Shown: positions 1,804 through 29,877, numbered from the stretch's first letter. The stretch is DNA of 64,000 bases from Prasinococcaceae sp. CCMP 1430 (GCA_013416795.1 RQSC01000009.1:28648-92647); one strand, 5' to 3'. Translations and numbers: made by a program. Notes: generated by a model from the sequence alone, not told the origin.

Positions 1804-3439
1804 TCGCCGCATTGTAACTTGTGTCTCATACGCGTGGCGGCCGCCGGTGCGTGCCCGACCGCCGCGTCTGCCGCCGCGCGGCCGCGCGGCTTCGCGCACG
1901 CAGCGCGCCGCTGTCACATCGCCCGCGAACGCGAAACGACGGGCGCCCCCATCAAAATGCAAAGAGATCAAAATGCAAAGAGTCGTTCGACCCAGCGGCC
2001 GTCGAGGACCGTTTCTGCCGGGTCCCTCTCGCCAATCTCCCATGGATCGATGGAGGCGCGGGATCGCGCGGCAGGTCCATGTTGAGGTGGGCGAGAGGGC
2101 CCCGAAACGCCCCTCGGCGGCGCCTGGATCGCAGCGAGCTGGATGTACTCGCCGCCCAAAAATTGCAACACCTCACATTTTGAGTCGAACACTAGTCGAA
2201 CACTAGCTAGTCCAGTTAATAGTAGGGGCGGCGAGGCTGCGACGACGAGCGAGGGGCGCGCGGCGCATAGTGCGCTCGTGCATCGTACTTGCTCTCGATT
2301 GTCGTCGGCGCGCGCGCTTGTTGTCGTCGTCGCGCGACGGTCAGTCGCCGCGCAGCAGCGCGAGCAGCCCGACGGCCTTGGCCTCTTGGTTGCCGCCGCC
2401 GAGCATGCGCTCGATGGCCGCCACGACGCCGGCCTGCGCGCGCACGGCGTCGCGCGCCTCGCGCCCCGCAGCGCGCCCGCCCCGCCGCTGCCAACGCCCG
2501 CGCCGCCGCTCCGGCGGGGCCCGCCAGCCACTCGGCCTGGTCCGCGGATTCCATGCTTACTCTGCGCAACCGCGCCGCGCCTATCGAATCCGCACGGTCT
2601 GAAGCTGCGTGTGTTCTGCTTGCGCGGAGCGCTGCGCCGCAGCAAAGCGCGCCTCCACCCTGACCGAATCCGTTCCCCCCGGCCCGGCGCCCGCAGGCGA
2701 GCGCTCGCGCTCATTTGTGTGCGCCATGCGCCCGGGCGGTTGCTTTGCTGCGCGCAGGCGCGGAGGTACGCTGGCAGCGGGGGGGGCGACCTGGCAGGAG
2801 TAGTGCCCCCGCGCCTCCAGCCCGCCTCCGGCCGCGGCCGCGACGGGGCCGCTGTGCCGCGCGCCTTCCGGCCACAGCCCGGGGCGCAACTTCCTACTAC
2901 TTCCGCCGCCAGCCAGCGGGGCGGGCGCATTCCTCCGCCCCCCCTGCCGCTGCGCCACGCTCGCGCCGCCCTGGCTGGCGTCGGTCGGGGAACGGACGCG
3001 GGCCCGAGCCCGGCGTCCTCCCCGCGCACACACCTGCCCCCCGCCCGCCCCTCCCCATTCTCTCACCTTGGCGCAGGCCCACGCAGGTGTGGACGGGGCC
3101 CCCGCGCACGTGATGGTGTTTTTGCGTCCCGACGTGCGTGCACGTCTGTGCGGCCGTCGTGGCACCTCGACCAGCCAGCTGGCAGCCGGGGTGGCGGCTG
3201 GCTGGCCTGGCTTTGGCTTGCCCGGCTGGACGGGGCGAAAAACGCGATTCGCCCGCGCGCGCTTTTCGTCCCTCCGCGATTGCGCGATTGTGCGCGCCCG
3301 CCCTTTTTGTGGCATTTCCCTTATCGGGATCGATCGCCCTCTGGCGAGATTTGCGGCTCGGGGGCGCCCCGCCGCGCGGGCCCGCCGTGGGGGCCGATTT
3401 TGATTCGCGCGCGGGCGCGGGAGCGCGCGGGAGCGCGCG

Positions 3440-4245
3440 NNNNNNNNNNNNNNNNNNNNNNNNNNNNNNNNNNNNNNNNNNNNNNNNNNNNNNNNNNNNN
3501 NNNNNNNNNNNNNNNNNNNNNNNNNNNNNNNNNNNNNNNNNNNNNNNNNNNNNNNNNNNNNNNNNNNNNNNNNNNNNNNNNNNNNNNNNNNNNNNNNNNN
3601 NNNNNNNNNNNNNNNNNNNNNNNNNNNNNNNNNNNNNNNNNNNNNNNNNNNNNNNNNNNNNNNNNNNNNNNNNNNNNNNNNNNNNNNNNNNNNNNNNNNN
3701 NNNNNNNNNNNNNNNNNNNNNNNNNNNNNNNNNNNNNNNNNNNNNNNNNNNNNNNNNNNNNNNNNNNNNNNNNNNNNNNNNNNNNNNNNNNNNNNNNNNN
3801 NNNNNNNNNNNNNNNNNNNNNNNNNNNNNNNNNNNNNNNNNNNNNNNNNNNNNNNNNNNNNNNNNNNNNNNNNNNNNNNNNNNNNNNNNNNNNNNNNNNN
3901 NNNNNNNNNNNNNNNNNNNNNNNNNNNNNNNNNNNNNNNNNNNNNNNNNNNNNNNNNNNNNNNNNNNNNNNNNNNNNNNNNNNNNNNNNNNNNNNNNNNN
4001 NNNNNNNNNNNNNNNNNNNNNNNNNNNNNNNNNNNNNNNNNNNNNNNNNNNNNNNNNNNNNNNNNNNNNNNNNNNNNNNNNNNNNNNNNNNNNNNNNNNN
4101 NNNNNNNNNNNNNNNNNNNNNNNNNNNNNNNNNNNNNNNNNNNNNNNNNNNNNNNNNNNNNNNNNNNNNNNNNNNNNNNNNNNNNNNNNNNNNNNNNNNN
4201 NNNNNNNNNNNNNNNNNNNNNNNNNNNNNNNNNNNNNNNNNNNNN
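3440..4245. other. Assembly gap (N run); probably hides the first exon of the GOGAT gene
   Basis: 806 N. The GOGAT ORF resumes after a branch point (GCTAAC, ~4287) and an acceptor AG at 4358-4359. Confidence 0.95.
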
Positions 4246-9341: not shown

Positions 9342-11252
9342 CTACGCGCCTTTTGTCTCCGGCACGAAGGCGAACACGTACGAGGTCGCCGCGAGGCAGA
9401 CGCACGAGAGCACCGTGAACGCCCCGGACACGCCACACGCAGTCATCAGCGGCAGGAAGTTCCTCCCCACTACGCTCACGCCCAGCCAGTTCGCGGCGGT
9501 GCACGCCGAGGCGGCCGTCGCGCGAATCTTGGCCGGGAACAACTCGGTGAACATCAGGTACGGCAGCGGGCCGGCGCCGCACGCGAAGAAGAACAGTGCC
9601 AAGGGCGCCACGGCGACGGCCACGAGAGGCGCGCCGACCGTCGACGCCACCGCGAGCGCGCCCATGCTCAAGGCCATGCCACCGAAGCTACCCATGAGGA
9701 GCGCCCGCCTGCCGAGCCTCTCTGTGAGGAACAGCGCGGTGATGCAGCCCAGTAGGTTCGCTGCGCCCGTCGCCAGGGCGGCCAGCTCGGGTGCGGCCAC
9801 ACCGACGTCCTTGAAGATGGTCGCGGTGAAGAAGACGAGCGAGTTGGCGCCAGACAGGGCCTGGAAGGCCGACAGGCCGATGCCCGTGAGCACCAGACGC
9901 CGGTACTTCGGATTCCGCAGGATGTCAACCAGGGTCGTCGATCCCGCCGTGGCGCTGGATTCCGCCTCCGCACACGCGCGAGCCTCATTGTCTGCGTCAA
10001 TGTGCGAGACGCCGCGGGTCTGGCGCAGCGTGCGGGCCGCCGCGGCGATCCGGCCGCGCCTGGCGAGCCACTGCGCCGTCTCGGGCGTCGTACCGAGCGA
10101 GGACATCGCCAGCGAGCTGGCGGCGAGGCCCGCGGCGAGCATGAAGATCGGCCTCCACCAGAACATCTCAAGACTGCCCAGCGCCATGGCTTGCGCGCCG
10201 TTGTGCGCGGCGGACTTGATGAGCGTGCCAGCGGACAGCGCCGAGACCTGGCCGATGACGAAGGCCGCGCGCGATGTGACCGCCAGCCGCGCGCGCATCG
10301 AGGGCGGAGCGAGCTCGCCCACGTACAGCGGCACCAGCATCGACGCGAGCCCTGAGCCCAGCCCCGTCATCAGGCGCCCCGCGGCGAACACCCCGACATC
10401 GGTGGCGGTGCCGCAGAGGGCCGCGCCCGAAGCGCAGATCAACAGCGACAGGCGGAGAGCGCCCGAGCGTCCGAGGGCCTCGGCAGCCGTGCCAGCGCAC
10501 ACCGCCCCCCAAAGGCCGCCGAAATCGTTCATGGTCACGACGAACAGCGGCAACGTGTTCGCGCACAGCCCGAAGGTGTTCCCGATGCACGAGAGCGGGA
10601 TGTTGATGCACGCGCCGAAGTAGCCAAACAACCAGCTGCCGACACACGCAATCGCGGCCGCGGCGCCCAGCGCCACCGTCAGGCGCCCGTCGCCTTCGGC
10701 GCCGGCAGCGCCGGCTTCGTCGGCGGCGGGCGAGTCCGAGACGAGCGCCGCGCCCAAATCGAGCTCCGGGAGCGGCCTTTCGGGAGGCGGCAGCGTCACC
10801 TCGAGAGTGGAGAGCTCGCGCGGCGCGATCCCTCCCCCTTGGACCCCTAGCGGATCGTATCCCTCCGCATCCGACCGTGCGCCATCCGCTGACAGCTGCA
10901 GCGGGTCATACGCCAGCGTGGCCTCGTCAGGAGCGCCGAGCGCCGTTTCCACGCCCGTCTGGGGGGCGATCGGGCCGGAGTTGCCGTACGGGTACACCTG
11001 CGCGGCCGGGGTGGCCACGAGCGGCTCGGTCTCGTCGTAGGGGTACAGCTGACCCCCCGCCGGGCCTGCCGTGTCCACGGTGTGGATGGCCGCGGCGGTC
11101 GCCGTTGCCTCTTCCGGGTACAGTCTATCCATCGCCGCGAGGTTGGTCTGGTGGGACGCCGGCGGCGCGACGGTCTCGGGAGCCACCGCCTCTCCCACCG
11201 CGTCGGGTGGCGTGGCGCCATCGCCGTCATCGAGCGGCGCTGGCGCCGCCAT
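9342..11252 (-). CDS. MFS sugar porter (plastid glucose transporter-like) with a long acidic N-terminal extension, 636 aa
   Basis: About 12 hydrophobic segments; motifs LGRSGALRL, GRLMTGLGSG, YVGELAPPSMRA, FQALSGANSLVFF, ERLGRRALL, ELFPAKIRA, VPETKG. ATG at 11252 is in frame with TAG at 9342. Confidence 0.9.
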   Translation of the reverse strand: MAAPAPLDDGDGATPPDAVGEAVAPETVAPPASHQTNLAAMDRLYPEEATATAAAIHTVDTAGPAGGQLYPYDETEPLVATPAAQVYPYGNSGPIAPQTGVETALGAPDEATLAYDPLQLSADGARSDAEGYDPLGVQGGGIAPRELSTLEVTLPPPERPLPELDLGAALVSDSPAADEAGAAGAEGDGRLTVALGAAAAIACVGSWLFGYFGACINIPLSCIGNTFGLCANTLPLFVVTMNDFGGLWGAVCAGTAAEALGRSGALRLSLLICASGAALCGTATDVGVFAAGRLMTGLGSGLASMLVPLYVGELAPPSMRARLAVTSRAAFVIGQVSALSAGTLIKSAAHNGAQAMALGSLEMFWWRPIFMLAAGLAASSLAMSSLGTTPETAQWLARRGRIAAAARTLRQTRGVSHIDADNEARACAEAESSATAGSTTLVDILRNPKYRRLVLTGIGLSAFQALSGANSLVFFTATIFKDVGVAAPELAALATGAANLLGCITALFLTERLGRRALLMGSFGGMALSMGALAVASTVGAPLVAVAVAPLALFFFACGAGPLPYLMFTELFPAKIRATAASACTAANWLGVSVVGRNFLPLMTACGVSGAFTVLSCVCLAATSYVFAFVPETKGA

Positions 11253-11353
11253 CCCGGGGCCCGCGGCGTCGACGGCGGTCGCGTTCCGCCTCCTGCTGGT
11301 GGCCCTCGAAGCAGCGAACCTGCCCCTGCGCGCGATGCGCGCACCGCGCGCGG

Positions 11354-11946
11354 NNNNNNNNNNNNNNNNNNNNNNNNNNNNNNNNNNNNNNNNNNNNNNN
11401 NNNNNNNNNNNNNNNNNNNNNNNNNNNNNNNNNNNNNNNNNNNNNNNNNNNNNNNNNNNNNNNNNNNNNNNNNNNNNNNNNNNNNNNNNNNNNNNNNNNN
11501 NNNNNNNNNNNNNNNNNNNNNNNNNNNNNNNNNNNNNNNNNNNNNNNNNNNNNNNNNNNNNNNNNNNNNNNNNNNNNNNNNNNNNNNNNNNNNNNNNNNN
11601 NNNNNNNNNNNNNNNNNNNNNNNNNNNNNNNNNNNNNNNNNNNNNNNNNNNNNNNNNNNNNNNNNNNNNNNNNNNNNNNNNNNNNNNNNNNNNNNNNNNN
11701 NNNNNNNNNNNNNNNNNNNNNNNNNNNNNNNNNNNNNNNNNNNNNNNNNNNNNNNNNNNNNNNNNNNNNNNNNNNNNNNNNNNNNNNNNNNNNNNNNNNN
11801 NNNNNNNNNNNNNNNNNNNNNNNNNNNNNNNNNNNNNNNNNNNNNNNNNNNNNNNNNNNNNNNNNNNNNNNNNNNNNNNNNNNNNNNNNNNNNNNNNNNN
11901 NNNNNNNNNNNNNNNNNNNNNNNNNNNNNNNNNNNNNNNNNNNNNN
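11354..11946. other. Assembly gap (N run)
   Basis: 593 N followed by a poly-A tract. Confidence 0.95.
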
Positions 11947-12645
11947 GGAAAAAAAAAAAAAAAAAACGCAGAGCACTTTCGATTCGGAAGCGGGCCTTTT
12001 CCTTTTCGCCCCTTTTCGTTTTCGCGCGGGGCTCCGTCCGAAAACCCGAACCGTTCCGCCGCGTGCCGGGGCCGACGCCCGCCGCGCGGCGGCAGCGAAA
12101 TATCCGCCCCCGCGGCGGGAGCGGGCGCAACGTCGAATATCGAGTAAACAAGCGACGGGAAAGGCATCCAGCCAGCATTTTGTGTCGAACCCTGATTTGC
12201 GAAGGGGGGTGAGAGAAACCCATACTCGGGCGTTTGGAAAAAACAGCGGGTCGGAAGCGCGCGCGTTCGCCCCCGCGGCGAAGCGGGCTTCGGTCGGTCG
12301 GTTGGGACGGTGTCCAGCCGGCCAGGCGCCGCCTGCGCTTCCTTGGGCTCGGATCCGTGCGTGGGCCCGGGCGCGCGCGGGAGCGCGCCGCGCGCGCGCC
12401 GCCGGACAAGGCCGCCGACCCGGAAGTGCCGGCGCCCCGGCCGGGCAGTGCCCGACCGAGAAATCGGCGTGGCAAATCTGAGCGCGCGACTGGCCGACCA
12501 ACCAACCACGGGCTCAACCCACCGAGAGTACCTTCACCCGCCATGCGGCCCGGGCTGCGACGATCGATCAGACCTCCGCCCGGCCGGATCGGGGTGTGGT
12601 GTGCCCCTTCGGTTTTCGCCCGCCTTCGCACGTGGTGGATTCCGC

Positions 12646-22258: not shown

Positions 22259-24072
22259 TCAGACTCGCTCGACGACGAGGTAGCAGTGCACGTAATCCAT
22301 GTGGTATTCCTCGGGATTAGCGGCGACGCGCGCCTCGTACATGCCGAACATGCGGTCGACGATTGCCGCGCGCTCCTCCGCGGGCCGCGTCGCATCCAGC
22401 GCGTTCGCAAAGGTCGAGTTGGACCAAGTGCGCATCGTGGGGACGAAGTCGCGGGCGTGCGTCGCGCTATCCTGGGCCTCGCCGCGCTCCTTCGCGGCGA
22501 GATACTCGTCGAGGTACGGGCAGCGCACCACTCGCTCCTCGCACGACACCTGGGGGGGGGGGGCGCACGGGCAGGAGGACGGGGGGGGGTAGCGCCGAGG
22601 GAGGGGGCGTGCACAACGAAGGGAGGTCAGCCACGCCGCACGATCGCTGGCAGGGCACAGCACCCTGGTCACTTCAGCACGACCTTGAGCGTAACCCAAC
22701 CCAAAGTTGGGTTCGCGCGCGCGTGGGTCCTGCCCCAAGGCGGATGACGTACCACGCGCAGGCCCTCGAATGTGCCATCGGCCTCTTCGAAAGGCGCCAG
22801 CGTCTCCGCCATGGTCTTGTAGTGGTTGGGGAACGTGCATGCGGCGAACTCGGCCTCGGTGATGGTGCCGTCATCCACCAGCTCGCGCCACAGCTCGGCG
22901 AAGGTGGAGTACATGTTGGCACCGCGGTCGGTGTTGCCGAGGTAGTACCCTTCGGTGCTCTCGCAGAAGTTGACGAACACGAAGCGCCCGCCGAGCGCCA
23001 GCTCGGCGGAGCGCCGCTTGAGGATGCTCCGCCAGTCCTGCTGCGACTGTGGGGTGCGAGCCGACGCCACGCCACAGCGCACGCAGCGCGGCGGGACGGA
23101 GGCGTCAGCGCGCAGAGCGGCGGCACCGCGCCGGATCGAGCTCAGCCGCGCGAGCGCACGCGACCGCAGGACGCGCGCGCGCAAAGGAGGGTAAGAGGGG
23201 CACGCACCTGCGCCATGAACTTGGCTTTCTCATCGGGCTCGGCCTGCGTGGAGTGCAGCGTCGCCTGCAGGTCGCACGGCAGCTTGCTGAGCCAGTGCAT
23301 GGCGGTGAAGCTCATGCCCACCTGCACCGAGGCCGTCGGGTAGCATTGCTCGTAGAACGACGTGCCGCTGGCCGTCACGAACACGTTCGAGTGCTCCTCG
23401 GTGTACACTGGCACGCCCGGCAGCCGCTGCGTGCCCTGCGTGTAGTTGAAGAGCGACTTCCACTCGTTGAACGGCTGGTCCTCGTATTGGACGAGAACCT
23501 CGGTGTCGTCGCCTAGGCGCTCCCGGATCGCCGAGATGGCGCGGCCCATCAGTGGCATGGACGTGCCGCCGTCGGCAGTTCCGAAGTCGGCGAGCGCGAA
23601 AGGCGCCCCCGCGGCGGGCGCGGGTGCGGCGGCGACCGCATCGAGCACGAGGTCGCTCGCGTTCGCGATGACGTCGAAGCAGCCCTTGGTCGCCTTGCTG
23701 TAAAGGCCGTCGCCGTCCTCCCCGAGGGGCTCGTGGTGCGCGCGCTGTCGTCGGGCGCGACGATTAGAGCGCGCGATGGGGGGAGGGGGGGGGGCGTAAG
23801 CGCAGGGCGCAGCGGGCGTCAGCGGCGCAATCCCCTCGACGCGCACGCTCGGGGAGCGATTCTCCCCGCGCCCAGTCCCAAGTCACAGCCGCGCCACGCC
23901 TTGCCGGGAAAGCGCCGCGCCGCCGCACCTCCGTGGCCGCCGCCGCCGCCGCCGCAGCGCGCGCGCGCGCGCGCGCGCGCGCGCGCGCGCGGCCGCCGGC
24001 GCACTTTTCGCCTGCCGTTCGATGACGCGATACCAATGCCGTTCTACCTCGTGCAATCGTGCGGGCCCGCAT
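22259..24072 (-). CDS. SABATH-family (Methyltransf_7) SAM-dependent methyltransferase; exons 24072-23929, 23744-23208, 23046-22753, 22549-22259; ~421 aa
   Basis: Motifs LYSKAT, ADFGTADGGTS, GTSFYEQCYP, SFTAMHWLS, RSAELALGGRFV. All four exons are phase-0 consistent with GT-AG borders. Exon 1 is Arg/Ala-rich (transit-peptide-like) and is the least certain. Confidence 0.88.
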
Positions 24073-24211
24073 CGCGATCGATGCGTACTACATTTCCACT
24101 CTGGTCAAACGAAGCCACGGGAGATCCCAACTCGCCAATTTCCTCGAGGGCCGCGGCGCTCCCTGAAGGAAGGATGCGTCGTGCTGCTCGATCGACGCCG
24201 CGCGTGTGCCG

Positions 24212-27129
24212 ATGCTCGCCACCGCGCCTGGGATGCGCATCGGCGCGCTCTCGGCGCGCGCGCCGCGCGCCGCTGCGGGTGCGTGCGAGTGCGTGCGAGT
24301 GCGCACGCGCGCGTCCTCTTGCCGGAGTGTGTCTGGACGTTTCCGGCCACCGCCGAGGAGCGCGTCGTCGGCCCGCCGCCCCGGCCGCCGCTGCCGCCGC
24401 CGCGTGAGGTGTGTCCCGTGCCGATCACCCCCCCACGCACGCACGCGCGCCACGTCTCGCTCGAGAGCATCGCGGCGGGGGCTGGCCAAGGCCGCCGCGC
24501 GCATCGGTGCACTTTTTCACTCGCTTTCCACTTTGTGTGGCTTGCGCTGTTCGCTTTTCGCTTTTTCTTATCCAGTCGGTGACGTGGCCTTCGCAGGGCT
24601 CGGGGAGGGGCGTGGCGGTTGGCGCGGCGCGCGCGGGCGCGAGTGGCACGCGCCGCGCGCGCGCGCAGCGGCGCGGGCGGCCGCGGAGCTCAGGGGCCGC
24701 GCAGGCCGGGCGCGGTCGCGGAGAGCGCGTTCGGCATCGCCGACGTGGGGGCAGAAGAGGGCGCAGAGGATGCGGTCGCTCCCGGCGCATCGGCGAGCCC
24801 GCTGGTGCTCAAGTATCCCGGGCCGGCCAACTCGACGCTGTTCGTCGGCAACGACGGCCCGCTGTCGACGGACCAACCCGGCAACGGCGGCCTGCGCCTG
24901 CTGTCCTACGACACCGAGGCCGACGCCATCCACGAGTGCATCCATCTCACCCAGGGCATGACCAAGAAGCACGCCGTGTACAACACCGGCTTCGGCGGCG
25001 CCAAGCTGGTGGTGCATGCCCCGAACGGGCCCCAGTCGGTCGACAAGAAGGAGCTCATGGAGGTGGTCGCCTCCTCGCTCAAGGGGCTCAACGGCACGGT
25101 CTACACCGGCCAGGACCTGAACACCTCCGCGGACGACATGGACTACCTGGACGAGCTCTGCGACTACGTGCTGGCCAGCATCGGCAGCGTCACCGACGCC
25201 AACGTCGCCACCGCGCACGGAGTCTTCGGCGCGGTGCAAGGGACGCTGCAGGGCGTGGGGCGCGACGTCGCCGGTGGCTCGTTCTTCGTGCACGGCTGCG
25301 GCAAGGTCGGCAGCTCACTCGCGCGGCAGCTCGTCGCCGCTGGGGCGGCGAAGGTGCTCACATACGACATCAACTCAGAGCTCGCGAGCATACCCGGCTG
25401 CGTGAACGTGTCGGACAGCGGCGACGACTGGGTGGCCCACGCGTCGCAGTGCGACATGCTCTGCCCTTGCTCGATTTCCTGGCTGCTCACCGAGGAGGTC
25501 GTCGCCGGCCTCGACTGCGAGCTCATCGTCGGGGCGGCCAACCTGCCCTTCGCGACGCCCGCGGCGCGTGAGGCTGCGACGGCCAAGGGGATCCTTTTCG
25601 TGCCCGAGTCGGTGGCGAGCGCCGGCGCGGTGATTGTCGACTCGCTCGAGTGCTTCGACCGCGCGGCGTACCTCAGCGCCCGCCCGTCTGAGGTGTATGC
25701 GTTCACGCGCCACCTGACGCGCGAGGGGGCGCGCTCGGTGGCGGCCGCCGCCACGTCGTCCGCAGCGGGGGGGGTGGCGTCGCCCGAGGAGGTCGACGCG
25801 CTCGTCGCTGACCTCAGCGCGAGCTCCGCGCGGAAAACGCCCGCGTGCGCCCGCTTTCGCGAGTGGCGCGACGAGGCCGTCGTGCAGCTCGATTCGCTCG
25901 TCATCGGCGGCGGCATGGCTGGCACGGCCGCTGCGATGGAGCTGGCGCGCCTCAGCCCCCCTGGTTCGCGCATGATGCTGCTCGAATCGCGCACGGTCGC
26001 CAACGACGCTGCCTCGAGCTTCGGCGAATCGCGCATGTTCCGCCGCATGTACTCGGACGAGTACTTCTCGAAGATGCAGGCGACCGCCCTCGACATGTGG
26101 CGCGAGCTCGAGGAGGCGAGCGGCGAGGAGCTGCTTTCCACCAATGGTCTGCTCTTCTACGGCGAGACAGACACCGGCGAGACCGTGGAGGGGTCCGTGC
26201 CGGGCGCGCGGGAGGTGATGGAGAACCTGGGGATCGAGCACGAGTACTTCGTCGGCGAGGAGCTCGACAAGCGCTGGCCAAACCTCGTGAGCGGCTCGAG
26301 CGACGAGGGCGTCTTCGAGCACGCCGCCGGGAGCGTGAACTCGAGCGCCGCGTGCGCCGCCATGGCCGCGCGGGCGCAGGCGAGCGGCGTGGAGCTCGTC
26401 CAGGGCGAACGCGTCACGGACATGTGGAAGGACGCCGACGGCGCCGACGGTGTGCTGGTGGCCACCTCGAACGGCCGCCTGCTGCGCGCCAAGAGCGTCG
26501 TGCTGTGCGCCGGCGCATGGACAAACGACCTGCTCAAGCCGCTGGGCGTGCAGCTCGACCTCGAGGTCCACAACATGCACTGGGGACACTTCGAGGTCGA
26601 AGATGGCGCCGACATTCCGCAGTGGTTTTGCTTCCGCAAGGAGAAGAACGACTCCCCCGACGACGACCCCGCCAAGCTCGACGGTGGCTTGTACTACGGC
26701 TTCCCCAGGCACCACGAGGGCTCGACCGTCGTCAAGGTGGGCGTCGATTGGTGCCCTGACACCAGCAAGTTCCGCACGAAGAGCATGGCCGAGTTCTGCT
26801 ACGAGCCCGACGAGCACGTCGTCAGCTGCATCGAAAGCTTCCTCGCCGAGAACTGGACGGGCATCGGCAAGCTCAGCGACATGCAATGCTCGCCGTACAC
26901 GATGACCAAGGACCAGTACTTCATCCTCGACCGCTTGGAGAAGGTGCCCGAGGTCACCGTCTTCACCGGCGGGAACGGGCGCGCCTTCAAGTTCGCGCCC
27001 CTCATCGGGAAGCTGCTGGCCGAGCTCGCCACCGGCGTGCCCAAGGAGCAGCTCAGCTACGACGTGGCGCCGTTCGCGGCCGGGCGACAGGCGGCCGGCA
27101 TGACCGACGTCGAAGAGGTCTGCGCCTGA
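24212..27129 (+). CDS. Fusion of a Glu/Leu/Phe/Val dehydrogenase domain and a monomeric sarcosine oxidase / pipecolate oxidase-like FAD domain; exons 24212-24408 and 24705-27129
   Basis: Dehydrogenase: GGLRLLSY, GMTKK, GFGGAKLV (catalytic Lys), GQDLNT, VHGCGKVG (NAD binding), VGAAN, ASAGAVI. Oxidase: VIGGGMAG, SSFGESRMFR, CAGAW, PYTMTKDQYFILD, GRAFKFAPLIG. One uninterrupted ORF spans both. A phase-2 intron links a transit-peptide-like exon 1. Confidence 0.88.
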
Positions 27130-27574: not shown

Positions 27575-29397
27575 CTAATGCTGCTTGCCAAAGCCGGCCT
27601 TTATGGCCTGCTGCGTCCCCCACACGAGCTTGTCCAGCAGGCTCGCGAGGGTGAAGCATCCTCCGACGATGGCCATGAGGTTGGTCAAGTAGTCGGCGAG
27701 CGGTTGCCTCTTCTCCTCGATGACCACCTGGAACGGCGACGGCACGAAGCTGATGCGAACCGAGCTCAGCTCACTCGACTCGTACTGGTGGCTGTGCGCA
27801 GTCGTGTCGTAGAGGTCGATGGAGAAGTCGCCCTTTTCGACCGTTTGCAGCACGGCATTAATGTAGTGCTCGAAGGTCACGTTGTCCGTGCGAGCAGTGA
27901 AAGGAGTGTCGACGAAGCGCGCGCTCCACTCCTGCCACTCGCCCCCGTCTGGGCCTCTCACAAGCGACCTCACCTCGGCCTTGTCGTCTTCGGTGAGCTC
28001 GTGGCCGAACGTCAGGTGGTGCACGGTGTGGCTCAGGTTGAGGTGCACGTTGTTGAACGAGTGCCCCACGGCGTGGGCGCCCAGCTCGATCGTGCCGGGC
28101 ACCTTCTTCACCATCACGTAGCCATCCAGGCGGCAGCCGATCGCCGCGGAGTCGTGCTTGACGAGCTGTGCCAGCGCGCCGCGGCGCTGGCGCTTCGTTG
28201 CTGACCCGCCTGGGGCTGTTGGATCCTCGTCGCCCACGATACCATCGATGAACTTGGTCACCGCGTCGGTCGTCCGATCGCCCATGAACATCTCAGTCTT
28301 GCGCGACGCGCCGTCGGCGCGAAAGACGCGGATCGTCGGAAATCCCTGGATGCCCTCTTGTGAGCAGAAGCGCTGGTGGGCGACGCAGTCCACGCGCGCG
28401 ATGACGACCTTCCGGTCCCCGTACTTCTGCTTGGCGATGCCGGCCGTGTGCTCCCACACGGGGAGGAGCATCTTGCACCACGCGCACCATTTCGCCATGT
28501 ACGCGACCATGACGAGGGGCGCGCTCTTCGTCGCGGCTCCGTGCGTCTCCGGCGTGAGCTCGAGCGAGTGCTCGTCGACGAGCTGCTCCACCATGTCCTC
28601 GTCCTCGTACAGATAGTCGGCGGTCCCGTCCTCATCCGTCGCGGCCTGCACCATTTTCACCTCGAGCTCTGCGAACGCGGGGTCCGACTGACGATAGGTG
28701 GGCGACAGGCGATCGACGTACTTCTCGCCCTCAGAACCGTCCGCGTACAGCCGCGTCTTGCGCACCGTCTTCGCGCCGAACGTGGACACGCCGTCCACGT
28801 TGAGGCGGTGGCTGCCAATCGCGTTGCTCACATCGAGCGTGGCAAACTCGCACGCCAGCTCGGGGAAGCTCACCTGGGCGCGCACGAGCGAGACAAGGGA
28901 GGCGCGGGGGACGTCAGCACGCGCGAAAGTGCGATGGGTCGCGTGCCCCGAGCCATCGGACCGGGCCGACGCGCGGGTGCCGGGCGCGCGCGCGCGCGCG
29001 CGCGGGAGCCGCCCACCTTGAAGTTGATCGGCAGCACATCGCCGTTGAGGGACTTGTCGACGACGATCGACTGCGCGACACCATGACGGTGCGGCGCGTG
29101 CACCCGGTGTGCAGCAGAGGGCAACAGAAATACGGGAGGGGCACCGCGCGCGCCACGCGAGCGAGCGCGTCAGCGCAAGTAGAGAGTCCGCGGGGGCAGC
29201 GCCTGCCAGTAGCGCACGCGCTCGCGCACCGTGGTCGCGTGTGACGAGAGGTACGACCTCGTCTCGCCGCCGACAAGGAAGGCCACGGCGAACGCCGCCG
29301 CGGTGGTGAGCGCCGCGCCCGCGAGCGTCGACTCGCTCAGGTCGCGCGGCAGCTTCTTGTAGACGTCCAGCGCGCGCATGCCATCGAGTATGCCCAT
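27575..29397 (-). CDS. PDI-C type protein (ERGIC/Erv46-like N- and C-terminal domains with an inserted thioredoxin domain); exons 29397-29230, 29070-29017, 28873-27575; ~506 aa
   Basis: MRALDVYKKLPRDL plus a TM segment; FPELACEFATLDVS; thioredoxin WCAWC; GCRLDGYVMVKKVPG; NLSHTVHHLTFG; YLTNLMAIVGGCFT. Confidence 0.88.
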
Positions 29398-29877
29398 CGC
29401 GCCCGCGCGCCCCAGGCGGGGGCCCGCGCCGCTCGCGCGCCGAGTGGCGTCGCGCCGCGCTGCCAACACCCCCGCGCGCGTGCAGACGCTCCGGCCCATT
29501 TCGCACGTGCATTGCGTCCATCTTGATGGTTGATGGTGCGGTCCTGTTGCGGGTCAGATTCGTTCCAGCACCCCCCCCTGCAAGAAAACGCTCTCAGCAC
29601 CCCCTTTGGGTTAGATTGTTTGAGGTTTATGGCCTTCGCCCTTCGGGCGAAGGCCAATTTGAATGGATTGTGAAAAGCGATCCACATTAGAACATATATG
29701 TAGACCCTTCAGCGGCGACCGAGCAGGCGGAGGAGGCGACGACGAAGCGCCGCGCTCGAAGGCGGGAGCGGATGGCGAGCGAGGCGAGGAACAATGCGGA
29801 GCGTGGCCACAGGGTCGTCGCCACGCTTCCCTACCCGGGCGGAAAAGACGTCACGGTCGACGTCGGCCTGAGTTCGC

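What the first reader, a model, noticed from the sequence alone, without database searches (positions are those of the whole stretch)
22259..27129. Head-to-head SABATH methyltransferase and amino-acid dehydrogenase/amine-oxidase fusion: candidate metabolic micro-cluster
Seen: the predicted start codons (24072 on minus, 24212 on plus) are about 139 bp apart, implying one shared bidirectional promoter, and both proteins begin with Arg/Ala/Ser-rich transit-peptide-like leaders. Established: SABATH enzymes methylate carboxyl or nitrogen groups of small molecules (salicylate, xanthines, nicotinate to trigonelline); sarcosine/pipecolate oxidases act on N-methyl or cyclic amino acids; Leu/Phe/Val dehydrogenases interconvert amino and keto acids. 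Inference: three linked activities in one organelle making or recycling a methylated amino-acid-derived osmolyte or signal (an N-methyl amino acid or betaine, homarine/trigonelline type, or a Met-derived sulfonium compound). I know of no described pathway with this arrangement.
Basis: partly seen in the sequence, partly recalled or inferred. Interest (0 to 1): 0.85.

Follow-up and report, generated by a model that had tools for sequence, protein, structure and literature searches.

The report
Candidate homarine biosynthesis gene pair
A back-to-back gene pair in this green alga encodes three enzymes that are also neighbours, fused, or in one operon in diatoms, other algae and marine cyanobacteria, and they probably make the abundant ocean osmolyte homarine, whose biosynthetic genes are unknown.

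Summary
The gene pair is real. On the minus strand lies an intact three-exon Methyltransf_7 methyltransferase (MT). On the plus strand lies an amino-acid dehydrogenase (DH) fused to a NikD/sarcosine-oxidase-like flavoenzyme (DAO). The two candidate ATGs exist 139 bp apart, but each needs an unverified intron, so 5' ends and leader peptides stay open.

The linkage is not chance. The same head-to-head pair occurs in Dunaliella, three diatoms and a metagenomic alga. The genes are tandem in Pycnococcus. They are fused DH-DAO-MT in Tribonema, Pyramimonas and Nephroselmis, and DAO-MT in Porphyridium. In Polyangiaceae-like bacteria and in marine Synechococcus-type contigs (43 of 80 loci) they form an MT-DH-DAO-BCCT betaine-transporter operon. 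Prochlorococcus-type contigs carry MT-DH-DAO.

NikD, which oxidises piperideine-2-carboxylate to picolinate, is the best solved match of the DAO domain, and NikD's Glu101 loop and Asp276 are conserved. The DH pocket carries an invariant Asp and Asn where Leu/Phe enzymes are hydrophobic, suggesting lysine.

Best reading: lysine -> piperideine-2-carboxylate -> picolinate -> N-methylpicolinate (homarine). Known producers (Synechococcus, diatoms) carry the module; Micromonas and Ostreococcus gave no named hit. Functional module about 0.95; homarine about 0.6. No prior description was found.

The parts
22259..22549 (-). Methyltransferase exon C (C-terminal part, stop codon 22259-22261)
   Evidence: tblastn to the MT domains of three-way fusions (51-56% identity) and to Pycnococcus MT; splice model
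22550..22752 (-). MT intron 2 (203 nt, GTACGT...polyC-CAG)
   Evidence: Best-scoring GT-AG join that keeps the frame and the alignment to Pycnococcus MT
22753..23046 (-). MT exon B (middle part, Methyltransf_7 profile 153-240)
23047..23207 (-). MT intron 1 (161 nt, GTGCGT...CACAG)
23208..23744 (-). MT exon A. It holds the SAM-binding DFGTADGGTS motif and the TAMHWLS motif. Conservation starts at 23735 (HEPLGEDGDGLYSKATKGCFDV).
   Evidence: Pfam PF03492, 53.2 bits; 52% identity to Pycnococcus MT; motifs
23745..24072 (-). Unresolved 5' part of the MT gene. It contains the candidate first exon from ATG 24072, a candidate intron (for example donor GAG|GTGCGG at 23928, acceptor ...GACGACAG before 23744) and a (GC)n microsatellite at about 23957-23991.
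   Evidence: There is no in-frame ATG upstream of exon A, and 24072 is the only usable ATG; several GT-AG joins fit. Inferred, not shown.
24073..24211 (.). The 139 bp between the two candidate ATGs; putative shared divergent promoter/5' UTR region
   Evidence: Sequence. Orthologous head-to-head pairs have 520-750 bp between annotated starts. Promoter function is inferred only.
24212..24596 (+). Unresolved 5' part of the DH-DAO gene: candidate first exon from ATG 24212 and a candidate intron (donors GTGCGT at 24279/24289, acceptor TTCGCAG before 24597)
   Evidence: The main ORF frame is open only back to 24583 and has no ATG before the conserved domain. Inferred.
24796..25833 (+). ELFV-type amino-acid dehydrogenase domain. 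Carboxylate-binding Lys117, catalytic Lys129 and Asp166 are kept. The pocket residues are Asn89 (24883-24885), Gly164, Val338 and Asp341 (25639-25641).
   Evidence: Pfam; best solved matches are Phe/Leu dehydrogenases; family alignment
25870..27108 (+). NikD/monomeric-sarcosine-oxidase-like FAD oxidase domain with GGGMAG, Arg472/Arg475, Glu524, Tyr693, Lys706, Asp710, Cys757, Arg788 and Lys791. The ORF stops at 27127-27129.
   Evidence: Pfam DAO, 146 bits. NikD is the top solved match for the single sequence (133.5 vs 114 bits) and for the profile (186.9 vs 174.8 bits). Alignment.

Best explanation
The window holds a divergently transcribed pair that together encodes a three-step biosynthetic module.

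Step 1, inferred. The ELFV-type dehydrogenase domain oxidatively deaminates the alpha-amino group of a basic amino acid, most likely L-lysine. The resulting 6-amino-2-oxohexanoate cyclises spontaneously to delta-1-piperideine-2-carboxylate (P2C).

Step 2, inferred from homology to NikD. The fused flavin oxidase domain aromatises P2C to picolinate in two two-electron oxidations.

Step 3, inferred. The neighbouring Methyltransf_7 enzyme uses SAM to N-methylate picolinate, giving homarine (N-methylpicolinate), a betaine-type compatible solute.

What is shown is that the three catalytic units form one conserved functional module. Across algae and bacteria they are head-to-head neighbours, tandem neighbours, two-domain or three-domain fusions in the order DH-DAO-MT, or a translationally coupled operon that ends in a BCCT betaine-family transporter. 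The substrate, the product and the N- versus O-methylation are not shown.

Sub-probabilities: real functional module about 0.95; product is a betaine-type methylated solute about 0.8; product is homarine made from lysine about 0.6. The confidence given is for the full statement including homarine.
For: (1) Fusions. DH-DAO-MT proteins occur in Tribonema minus and two metagenomic relatives, with MT C-terminal, and in Pyramimonas CCMP2087 and Nephroselmis pyriformis. DAO-MT fusions occur in Porphyridium purpureum and three others. The window's MT exons are 42-56% identical to the MT domain of the fusions.

(2) Adjacency. The same MT(-)/DH-DAO(+) head-to-head pair is found in Dunaliella salina, a metagenomic alga, Pseudo-nitzschia multistriata, Cyclotella cryptica and Nitzschia inconspicua. 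The genes are tandem in Pycnococcus.

(3) Operons. Polyangiaceae-like contigs carry MT/DH/DAO/BCCT with overlapping stop-start codons, and a second prokaryote has the three genes clustered. These proteins are 37-44% identical to the window's and keep its signature residues. Of 80 marine metagenome loci, 43 show MT-DH-DAO-BCCT in that order and 14 show MT-DH-DAO; most of the rest are cut by contig ends.

(4) Taxa. The 56-67% GC loci share 81-97% identical DAO proteins. Two of them carry Cyano-2 RNA and a Glutamine-II riboswitch, which points to marine Synechococcus.

(5) Chemistry. NikD is the best solved match. The family shares NikD's Glu101-containing loop, which MSOX lacks, and has Asp at NikD Asp276. 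NikC/NikD convert lysine to P2C and then to picolinate (PMC4021061). In the DH, Asn is invariant at the LeuDH Leu40/GluDH Lys89 position, Gly at the Ala113 position and Asp at the Val294/Ser380 position (the equivalences are recalled from Baker et al. 1995).

(6) Match to producers. Homarine is reported in both Synechococcus strains tested, in 4 of 6 diatoms and in E. huxleyi, but not in Micromonas or Ostreococcus (PMC8269262). No named Micromonas or Ostreococcus hit appeared. Close MT orthologues (40-49% identity) occur in cnidarians, a brachiopod, krill and amphioxus; sea anemones are shown to hold homarine (PMC5372665, title and term counts only), and a wider animal distribution is recalled. 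Homarine pathways are stated to be unknown (PMC8269262, PMC9723723).
Against: No enzyme activity, metabolite or expression data exist for any member; the assignment is purely comparative.

NikD Trp355, which stacks on picolinate, is Arg in eukaryotes and Gln in prokaryotes throughout the family. The covalent-flavin Cys is kept in the window but lost in diatoms, Dunaliella and others. NikD's lead over MSOX is modest: 12 bits for the profile and 19 for the single sequence.

The MT's best solved relative is a fatty-acid O-methyltransferase, so O-methylation cannot be excluded.

Prochlorococcus-type loci (27-33% GC, with Yfr8 RNA directly downstream) also carry MT-DH-DAO, yet Heal 2021 names only Synechococcus among its cyanobacteria as holding homarine. 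Dunaliella and freshwater Tribonema carry the module but are not known homarine producers.

Thalassiosira pseudonana makes homarine, but neither it nor Phaeodactylum nor E. huxleyi appeared by name among the hits. The word-based searches cannot prove absence. No ELFV-family lysine alpha-dehydrogenase is known to me.
Confidence: 0.6

Rival explanations
1. The module is the same, with the same order of steps, but the product differs. The DH might act on ornithine or another polar or basic amino acid. The oxidase would then make a different unsaturated N-heterocyclic carboxylate, for example pyrrole-2-carboxylate from pyrroline-2-carboxylate, or stop at a dihydro intermediate. The MT would make another N-methyl betaine, or an O-methyl ester.
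For: The specificity residues only indicate a polar or basic side chain. NikD Trp355 is replaced. The MT's closest solved relative is an O-methyltransferase. Prochlorococcus-type, Dunaliella and Tribonema carriers are not known to contain homarine.
Against: An N-methylpyrrole or a methyl ester is not a betaine, which sits poorly with the BCCT transporter that closes the operon in 43 of 80 loci. No other abundant methylated metabolite is reported that is shared by Synechococcus and diatoms and lacks a known pathway. The Gly at the LeuDH Ala113 position suggests a long side chain, as in Phe dehydrogenases (recalled).
Confidence: 0.3
2. The module is catabolic or recycling. A betaine or N-methyl amino acid is imported by the BCCT carrier and oxidatively demethylated by the sarcosine-oxidase-like domain. 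The freed amino acid is deaminated by the DH, and the methyltransferase serves an unrelated or regulatory role.
For: MSOX-family enzymes typically demethylate N-methyl amino acids. BCCT carriers are usually importers.
Against: A SAM-dependent methyltransferase adds methyl groups, and it is fused C-terminal to the oxidase in many lineages, which is hard to reconcile with demethylation. MSOX His269 is replaced by Asp as in NikD, and the NCBIfam cut-offs for sarcosine and N-methyltryptophan oxidases are not reached (195.8 < 257; 168.6 < 479.65). Phototrophs that accumulate the solute carry the genes. Synthesis genes next to an uptake system for the same solute have precedent in the Synechococcus WH8102 glycine betaine genes SYNW1913-1917.
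Confidence: 0.05
3. The adjacency in this window is incidental. Two unrelated genes merely share an intergenic region in a compact genome.
For: Head-to-head pairs are common in compact algal genomes. In Pedinophyceae the two genes lie about 85 kb apart.
Against: The same pair recurs in at least six eukaryotic lineages, as fusions at three or more places in the tree, and as an operon in dozens of prokaryotic loci.
Confidence: 0.02

Closest known systems
NikC/NikD (SanL and partner) picolinate branch of nikkomycin biosynthesis in Streptomyces
   Same: The proposed chemistry is the same: alpha-deamination of L-lysine gives piperideine-2-carboxylate, which an MSOX-family flavoenzyme aromatises to picolinate (PMC4021061). 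NikD is the best solved match of the DAO domain. Arg53, Glu101, Tyr258, Asp276 and Lys358 equivalents are conserved.
   Different: Step 1 here is an NAD(P)-type ELFV dehydrogenase fused to the oxidase, not a PLP aminotransferase. Trp355 is Arg or Gln, and the covalent-flavin Cys is not conserved across the family. The product goes to a methyltransferase rather than a CoA ligase. Identity to NikD is only about 30%, whereas module orthologues score 350-620 bits against NikD's 187.
SABATH / Methyltransf_7 methyltransferases (plant salicylate and jasmonate carboxyl MTs, coffee xanthine N-MTs and trigonelline synthase; Mycobacterium marinum fatty-acid O-MT)
   Same: Pfam PF03492 match, the SAM-binding D-x-G-x-A-D-G motif and the H-W-L-S motif. 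The family includes enzymes that N-methylate a ring nitrogen, including nicotinate to trigonelline in coffee (recalled from memory).
   Different: The best solved relative is the bacterial fatty-acid O-MT (158.6 bits), not plant enzymes (109 bits or less). The Gln that orients the carboxylate in SAMT and FAMT aligns with Cys (eukaryotes) or Lys/Arg (bacteria). No NCBIfam model matches. The substrate is unknown.
Glycine betaine synthesis cluster of marine Synechococcus (GSMT/SDMT next to ProVWX, SYNW1913-1917)
   Same: A methyltransferase-based compatible-solute pathway encoded beside a transporter for the same class of solute (PMC2874817).
   Different: The enzyme families and the precursor differ: glycine is methylated three times there, and no oxidation steps are involved. 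The transporter is an ABC system rather than BCCT.
Leucine/phenylalanine/tryptophan dehydrogenases (ELFV family)
   Same: The fold, both catalytic lysines, the catalytic Asp and the dinucleotide-binding motif are conserved.
   Different: The hydrophobic specificity pocket is replaced by Asn/Gly/Val/Asp, invariant from bacteria to diatoms. No NCBIfam equivalog cut-off is reached. In eukaryotes the domain is fused to an oxidase.

Membership tests
Methyltransf_7 / SABATH (PF03492) | Profile match above the Pfam gathering score | tested here: met
   Window exon A scores 53.2 bits and exon B 35.6 bits (cut-off 29.8). Orthologues and fusion domains score 92-106 bits.
Methyltransf_7 / SABATH (PF03492) | SAM-binding and substrate-clamp motifs (D-x-G-x-A-D-G; Trp of the (M/H/Q)-W-L-S motif) | tested here: met
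   DFGTADGG and TAMHWLS are present. 49 of 50 near-invariant family positions are kept.
Methyltransf_7 / SABATH (PF03492) | Carboxylate-orienting Gln of carboxyl O-methyltransferases (SAMT Gln25, FAMT equivalent) | tested here: not met
   In the HMMER alignment to FAMT, the Gln of TYSQSSRLQ aligns with Cys of YS.AT.GC in eukaryotic members and with Lys/Arg (T.GAK/GAR) in bacterial members. The residue roles are recalled from the literature.
NikD-type P2C oxidase (MSOX superfamily) | MSOX fold with an FAD-binding GxGxxG motif; NikD closer than sarcosine oxidases | tested here: met
   NikD is top by phmmer (133.5 vs 114.1 bits) and by profile (186.9 vs 174.8 bits).
NikD-type P2C oxidase (MSOX superfamily) | Active-site Arg53, Glu101, Tyr258, Asp276 and Lys358 | tested here: met
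   Arg475, Glu524, Tyr693, Asp710 and Lys791 in the window are invariant across 30 or more eukaryotic and prokaryotic orthologues. MSOX lacks the Glu loop, and at the Asp position (His269 in MSOX, recalled) HMMER leaves a gap in MSOX.
NikD-type P2C oxidase (MSOX superfamily) | Trp355 stacking on the picolinate ring | tested here: not met
   This position is Arg788 in the window (GRAFKF, invariant in eukaryotes) and Gln in prokaryotes (GQAFKF).
NikD-type P2C oxidase (MSOX superfamily) | Covalent 8-alpha-S-cysteinyl FAD (Cys321) | tested here: inconclusive
   Cys757 is present in the window (QCSPYT), but the position is Ala, Ser, Thr, Val or His in Dunaliella, Chloropicon, Tribonema and diatoms.
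NikD-type P2C oxidase (MSOX superfamily) | Four-electron oxidation of P2C to picolinate | not testable with these tools
   Needs an enzyme assay.
Monomeric sarcosine oxidase / N-methyltryptophan oxidase | Curated equivalog score, and His269 | tested here: not met
   NCBIfam N-methyl-L-tryptophan oxidase scores 195.8 against a cut-off of 257; soxA_mon scores 168.6 against 479.65. Asp stands at the position that is His269 in MSOX (recalled).
ELFV amino-acid dehydrogenases | Catalytic Lys, carboxylate-binding Lys, catalytic Asp and Rossmann motif | tested here: met
   Lys117, Lys129, Asp166 and GCGKVG are aligned to Rhodococcus PheDH Lys66, Lys78 and Asp118.
Leu/Phe/Val/Trp dehydrogenase specificity group | Hydrophobic side-chain pocket (LeuDH Leu40, Ala113, Val291, Val294) | tested here: not met
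   The pocket is Asn89, Gly164, Val338 and Asp341, invariant in the family including bacteria. The residue equivalences rest on motif alignment and recalled literature.
Known DMSP S-methyltransferases (DSYB, TpMMT, DsyG/DSYE) | Same methyltransferase family | tested here: not met
   DsyG/DSYE are PF08241 and about 31% identical to TpMMT (PMC11306096). The window MT is PF03492.

The most novel reading that the evidence does not exclude
This gene pair, its fusions, and the MT-DH-DAO-BCCT operon of marine Synechococcus are the missing biosynthetic pathway for homarine, running lysine -> P2C -> picolinate -> N-methylpicolinate. The pathway would be shared by picocyanobacteria, diatoms and several green, red and yellow-green algae. 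Marine animals would keep only the methyltransferase and take picolinate from tryptophan breakdown. The genes would then be the first markers for tracking the production of one of the most abundant nitrogenous metabolites in ocean particles. The data would also predict homarine, or a close relative, in uncultured Prochlorococcus lineages and in this prasinophyte-grade alga.
Probability: 0.6. Interest if true: 0.92.

Novelty: new variant of a known kind. Interest (0 to 1): 0.88.

Why it matters
Homarine is among the most abundant small nitrogen compounds in marine particles. It acts as an osmolyte, a bacterial growth substrate and an animal infochemical. Its bacterial catabolic operon was described only in 2026 (PMC13236597). 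Several papers state that no biosynthetic gene is known (PMC8269262, PMC9723723).

A conserved, easily recognised three-enzyme module would make three things directly testable: who makes homarine, when, and from what precursor. The tests are heterologous expression, a Synechococcus knockout, and gene counts in metagenomes and metatranscriptomes.

Independently of the product, two points stand. First, this is an unusually deeply conserved eukaryotic gene pair: the same divergent arrangement occurs in diatoms and green algae and is mirrored by a prokaryotic operon and by repeated domain fusions. Second, the dehydrogenase would be an ELFV-family enzyme with a re-engineered, acidic specificity pocket.

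Tried and rejected
(1) Known DMSP methyltransferases as the identity of the MT. Rejected: DsyG/DSYE are PF08241.

(2) Bacterial stand-alone MT loci from GTDB genomes (80 loci). None has DH or DAO nearby. About half sit beside a TRAP DctPQM transporter. This did not help to name the substrate, and because hits were ranked by closeness to a gammaproteobacterial query, the scan could not reveal cyanobacteria.

(3) Curated families. No NCBIfam model reaches its cut-off for DH or DAO, and none matches the MT.

(4) Thalassiosira pseudonana, Phaeodactylum and E. huxleyi. They were not seen by name in the protein searches. Supplements of a T. pseudonana transcriptome paper gave no usable annotation. 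Unresolved.

(5) Species-level homarine values from Heal 2021. The table is on Dryad and is not held; only the species list was retrieved.

(6) 5' exon modelling. Many GT-AG combinations are compatible, so no unique model emerged.

(7) Amino_oxidase+DAO fusions looked like a non-homologous replacement of step 1. In the tree, however, their DAO domains fall in the sister family, outside the module clade, so they are not used as evidence.

(8) Rfam scans of 9 further Synechococcus-type loci found nothing. The taxon assignment of those loci rests on 81-97% protein identity to the two loci that carry cyanobacterial RNAs.

(9) Paper searches for any prior description of this pair, or of homarine synthesis genes, found none.

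(10) Structure prediction was not run. The tools return no coordinates, so it could not test the pocket claims.

Full report
WHAT IS THERE. A Tara Oceans contig (L010) encodes the dehydrogenase-oxidase protein at 99-100% identity.

The plus strand carries one long ORF, 24619..27129 (836 aa). It holds ELFV_dehydrog_N and ELFV_dehydrog, followed by a DAO flavoenzyme domain.

The minus strand carries a Methyltransf_7 (PF03492) gene in three reading frames. Two canonical introns, 23207-23047 (GTGCGT...CAG) and 22752-22550 (GTACGT...CAG), join the pieces into an intact 373-aa core. That core is 44% identical to the single-exon Pycnococcus orthologue and keeps 49 of 50 near-invariant family positions. 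Both genes therefore look functional.

Neither is in frame with its conserved body, and no other ATG is available, so each gene needs a further 5' intron. Several GT-AG combinations fit. The start codons, the shared promoter and the transit peptides therefore remain unverified. Several MT orthologues have no N-terminal extension at all.

IS THE LINKAGE MORE THAN CHANCE? Yes, by four independent kinds of evidence.

(a) Fusions. A search with the 836-aa protein found DH-DAO fusions in Dunaliella, Pedinophyceae, Pycnococcus and Chloropicon. It also found proteins of about 1,180 aa that add a C-terminal Methyltransf_7 domain, in Tribonema minus and two metagenomic relatives. A second search added three-way fusions in Pyramimonas and Nephroselmis. 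An exhaustive profile search added DAO-MT two-domain proteins in Porphyridium purpureum and three other sequences. The window's MT exons are 42-56% identical to the fused MT domains. On a DH-DAO tree the three-way fusions sit in at least three separate places.

(b) Eukaryotic adjacency. The MT(-)/DH-DAO(+) head-to-head arrangement recurs, with 520-750 bp between the annotated genes, in Dunaliella salina, Pseudo-nitzschia multistriata, Cyclotella cryptica and Nitzschia inconspicua; a metagenomic alga shows the same divergent pair. Pycnococcus has the genes in tandem. Only Pedinophyceae has them about 85 kb apart.

(c) Prokaryotic operons. Polyangiaceae-like contigs carry MT, DH, DAO and a BCCT transporter with overlapping stop and start codons. 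A second prokaryote clusters the three enzymes. These proteins are 37-44% identical to the window's and keep every signature motif.

(d) Abundance in the sea. A metagenome scan with the bacterial-type oxidase returned 80 loci. Of these, 43 show MT-DH-DAO-BCCT in that order on one strand and 14 show MT-DH-DAO. Most of the rest are cut by contig ends.

WHO CARRIES THE OPERON. The loci fall into two GC classes.

In the 56-67% GC class, the DAO proteins are 81-97% identical to one another. Two of these loci contain a full-length Cyano-2 RNA (178.7 bits) and a Glutamine-II riboswitch. Their neighbours include hisB, fabI, a carotenoid oxygenase and a photolyase. I read these loci as marine Synechococcus.

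The 27-33% GC class lacks the BCCT gene. In two loci it has the Prochlorococcus sRNA Yfr8 directly downstream of the oxidase gene.

A 2010 paper predicts that the BCCT gene SYNW0229 of Synechococcus WH8102 lies in a five-gene operon, SYNW0229-0233, with unannotated partners (PMC2874817). That fits the Ham1-MT-DH-DAO-BCCT run seen in L127. I could not check those sequences.

In the oxidase tree, all module-linked sequences form one clade. A prokaryotic subgroup is sister to a eukaryotic subgroup.

WHAT THE ENZYMES LOOK LIKE.

Oxidase. The best solved match is NikD, both for the window sequence (133.5 bits against 114.1 for sarcosine oxidase) and for a 14-sequence profile (186.9 against 174.8). 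NikD aromatises piperideine-2-carboxylate, made from lysine by NikC, to picolinate (PMC4021061). The family shares with NikD the loop that carries Glu101, which sarcosine oxidase lacks. It also has Asp where NikD has Asp276; sarcosine oxidase has His269 there (recalled). The common Arg, Tyr and Lys are kept as well. All are invariant from bacteria to diatoms. Two differences stand out. NikD Trp355 is Arg or Gln, and the flavin-linking Cys is kept in the window but lost in many orthologues.

Dehydrogenase. The catalytic residues match Phe/Leu dehydrogenases. The four pocket positions that set specificity read Asn, Gly, Val, Asp instead of hydrophobic residues. Asn and Asp are invariant in all members, including the bacterial ones. 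The equivalence to LeuDH Leu40/Ala113/Val291/Val294 and GluDH Lys89/Ser380 is from memory of Baker et al. 1995 plus motif alignment. An acidic, roomy pocket suggests a long basic side chain, that is lysine.

Methyltransferase. It is a Methyltransf_7 member whose nearest solved relative is the Mycobacterium marinum fatty-acid O-methyltransferase. It lacks the carboxylate-orienting Gln. It matches no curated NCBIfam family.

MECHANISM PROPOSED. Lysine is converted by the DH, using NAD(P)+, to 6-amino-2-oxohexanoate, which is in equilibrium with P2C. The DAO, with FAD, carries out two oxidations to give picolinate. The MT, with SAM, gives N-methylpicolinate, which is homarine.

Several observations fit this scheme. 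The domain order in the fusions (DH-DAO-MT) equals the reaction order. DAO-MT fusions tie steps 2 and 3 together. The BCCT carrier, the family that moves betaines, points to a betaine product. Only the module's conservation is shown; each chemical step is inferred.

FIT TO WHAT IS KNOWN ABOUT HOMARINE. Homarine was found in both Synechococcus strains tested, in four of six diatoms and in one E. huxleyi strain. It was not found in Micromonas or Ostreococcus (PMC8269262 and PMC13236597). It is a major solute of Thalassiosira weissflogii and occurs in the green alga Platymonas (PMC7024275).

The DH-DAO fusion is present in diatoms of all major classes: Pseudo-nitzschia, Fragilariopsis, Thalassionema, Dactyliosolen, Corethron, Chaetoceros, Cylindrotheca, Cyclotella and Nitzschia. 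No named Micromonas or Ostreococcus protein appeared.

Close MT orthologues without the DH-DAO partner occur in sea anemones, corals, a jellyfish, a brachiopod, krill and amphioxus. A paper on the anemones Actinia equina and Anemonia sulcata names homarine 67 times (PMC5372665; seen only as title, abstract start and term counts), and its wider spread in marine invertebrates is recalled. Animals could draw picolinate from the kynurenine pathway; that is an inference.

Papers state that homarine biosynthetic genes are unknown. Nine literature searches found no description of this pair.

WHAT DOES NOT FIT. Prochlorococcus-type carriers, Dunaliella and freshwater Tribonema are not known homarine producers. 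T. pseudonana makes homarine but was not seen among the named hits. NikD's stacking Trp is replaced. O-methylation is not excluded.

I therefore put about 0.95 on a real three-enzyme module, about 0.8 on a betaine-type product and about 0.6 on homarine from lysine. The main rival, at about 0.3, is the same module making a different heterocyclic or methylated product. A catabolic reading (about 0.05) and coincidence (about 0.02) are unlikely.

VERDICT.

The enzymes belong to known superfamilies and the chemistry has a precedent in nikkomycin biosynthesis, so I class this as a new variant of a known kind. It offers the first concrete gene candidates for a long-open question in marine metabolism, and it is directly testable.

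Noticed in passing
L011-L090 (GTDB genomes), e.g. L005:1353-7451: Stand-alone orthologues of the methyltransferase are widespread in marine Gammaproteobacteria (Granulosicoccaceae, Arenicellales, sponge-associated Poriferihabitaceae, an Olavius worm symbiont), SAR324 and others; 521 or more loci encode one. In about half of the 80 loci fetched the gene sits beside an unusual TRAP DctP/DctQ/DctM transporter, often with a LysE exporter nearby. No DH or DAO is present. These bacteria may import a carboxylate such as picolinate and methylate it.
   Followed up: partly
L164:1913-2118, L171:4348-4553: In low-GC (27-33%) marine contigs, the sRNA Yfr8 (Rfam RF02360) lies directly downstream of the MT-DH-DAO genes. 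This implies that some Prochlorococcus lineages carry the module, here without the BCCT gene.
   Followed up: partly
P0352, P0360 (no window coordinates): Fusions of a flavin amine oxidase (PF01593) with a NikD-like DAO domain exist in both orders. In the tree their DAO domains fall in a sister family outside the module clade.
   Followed up: partly
P0280, P0281, P0282: A separate, long-branched group of three-way fusions of about 1,300 aa (DH-DAO-MT plus extra Pyr_redox-like matches) is only 28-37% identical to the diatom protein.
   Followed up: no
window 23957-23991: A perfect (GC)n microsatellite lies between the two genes. One candidate MT first exon would translate it as an (Arg-Ala)n run.
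   Followed up: no
window 27575-29521 (-): The downstream neighbour is a thioredoxin/ERGIC-COPII-type protein. The same neighbour follows the DH-DAO gene on the Tara contig L010, so the window organism or a very close relative occurs in Tara Oceans samples.
   Followed up: partly
window 2001-4000 and 10001-12000: Two 2-kb stretches have markedly lower GC (0.52 and 0.51) than the roughly 0.70 of the rest of the window.
   Followed up: no
L094:3098-14126: In one prokaryotic metagenome contig the MT, DH and DAO genes are interleaved with a P-type ATPase and sit inside a V/A-type ATPase gene cluster. The organism was not identified.
   Followed up: no
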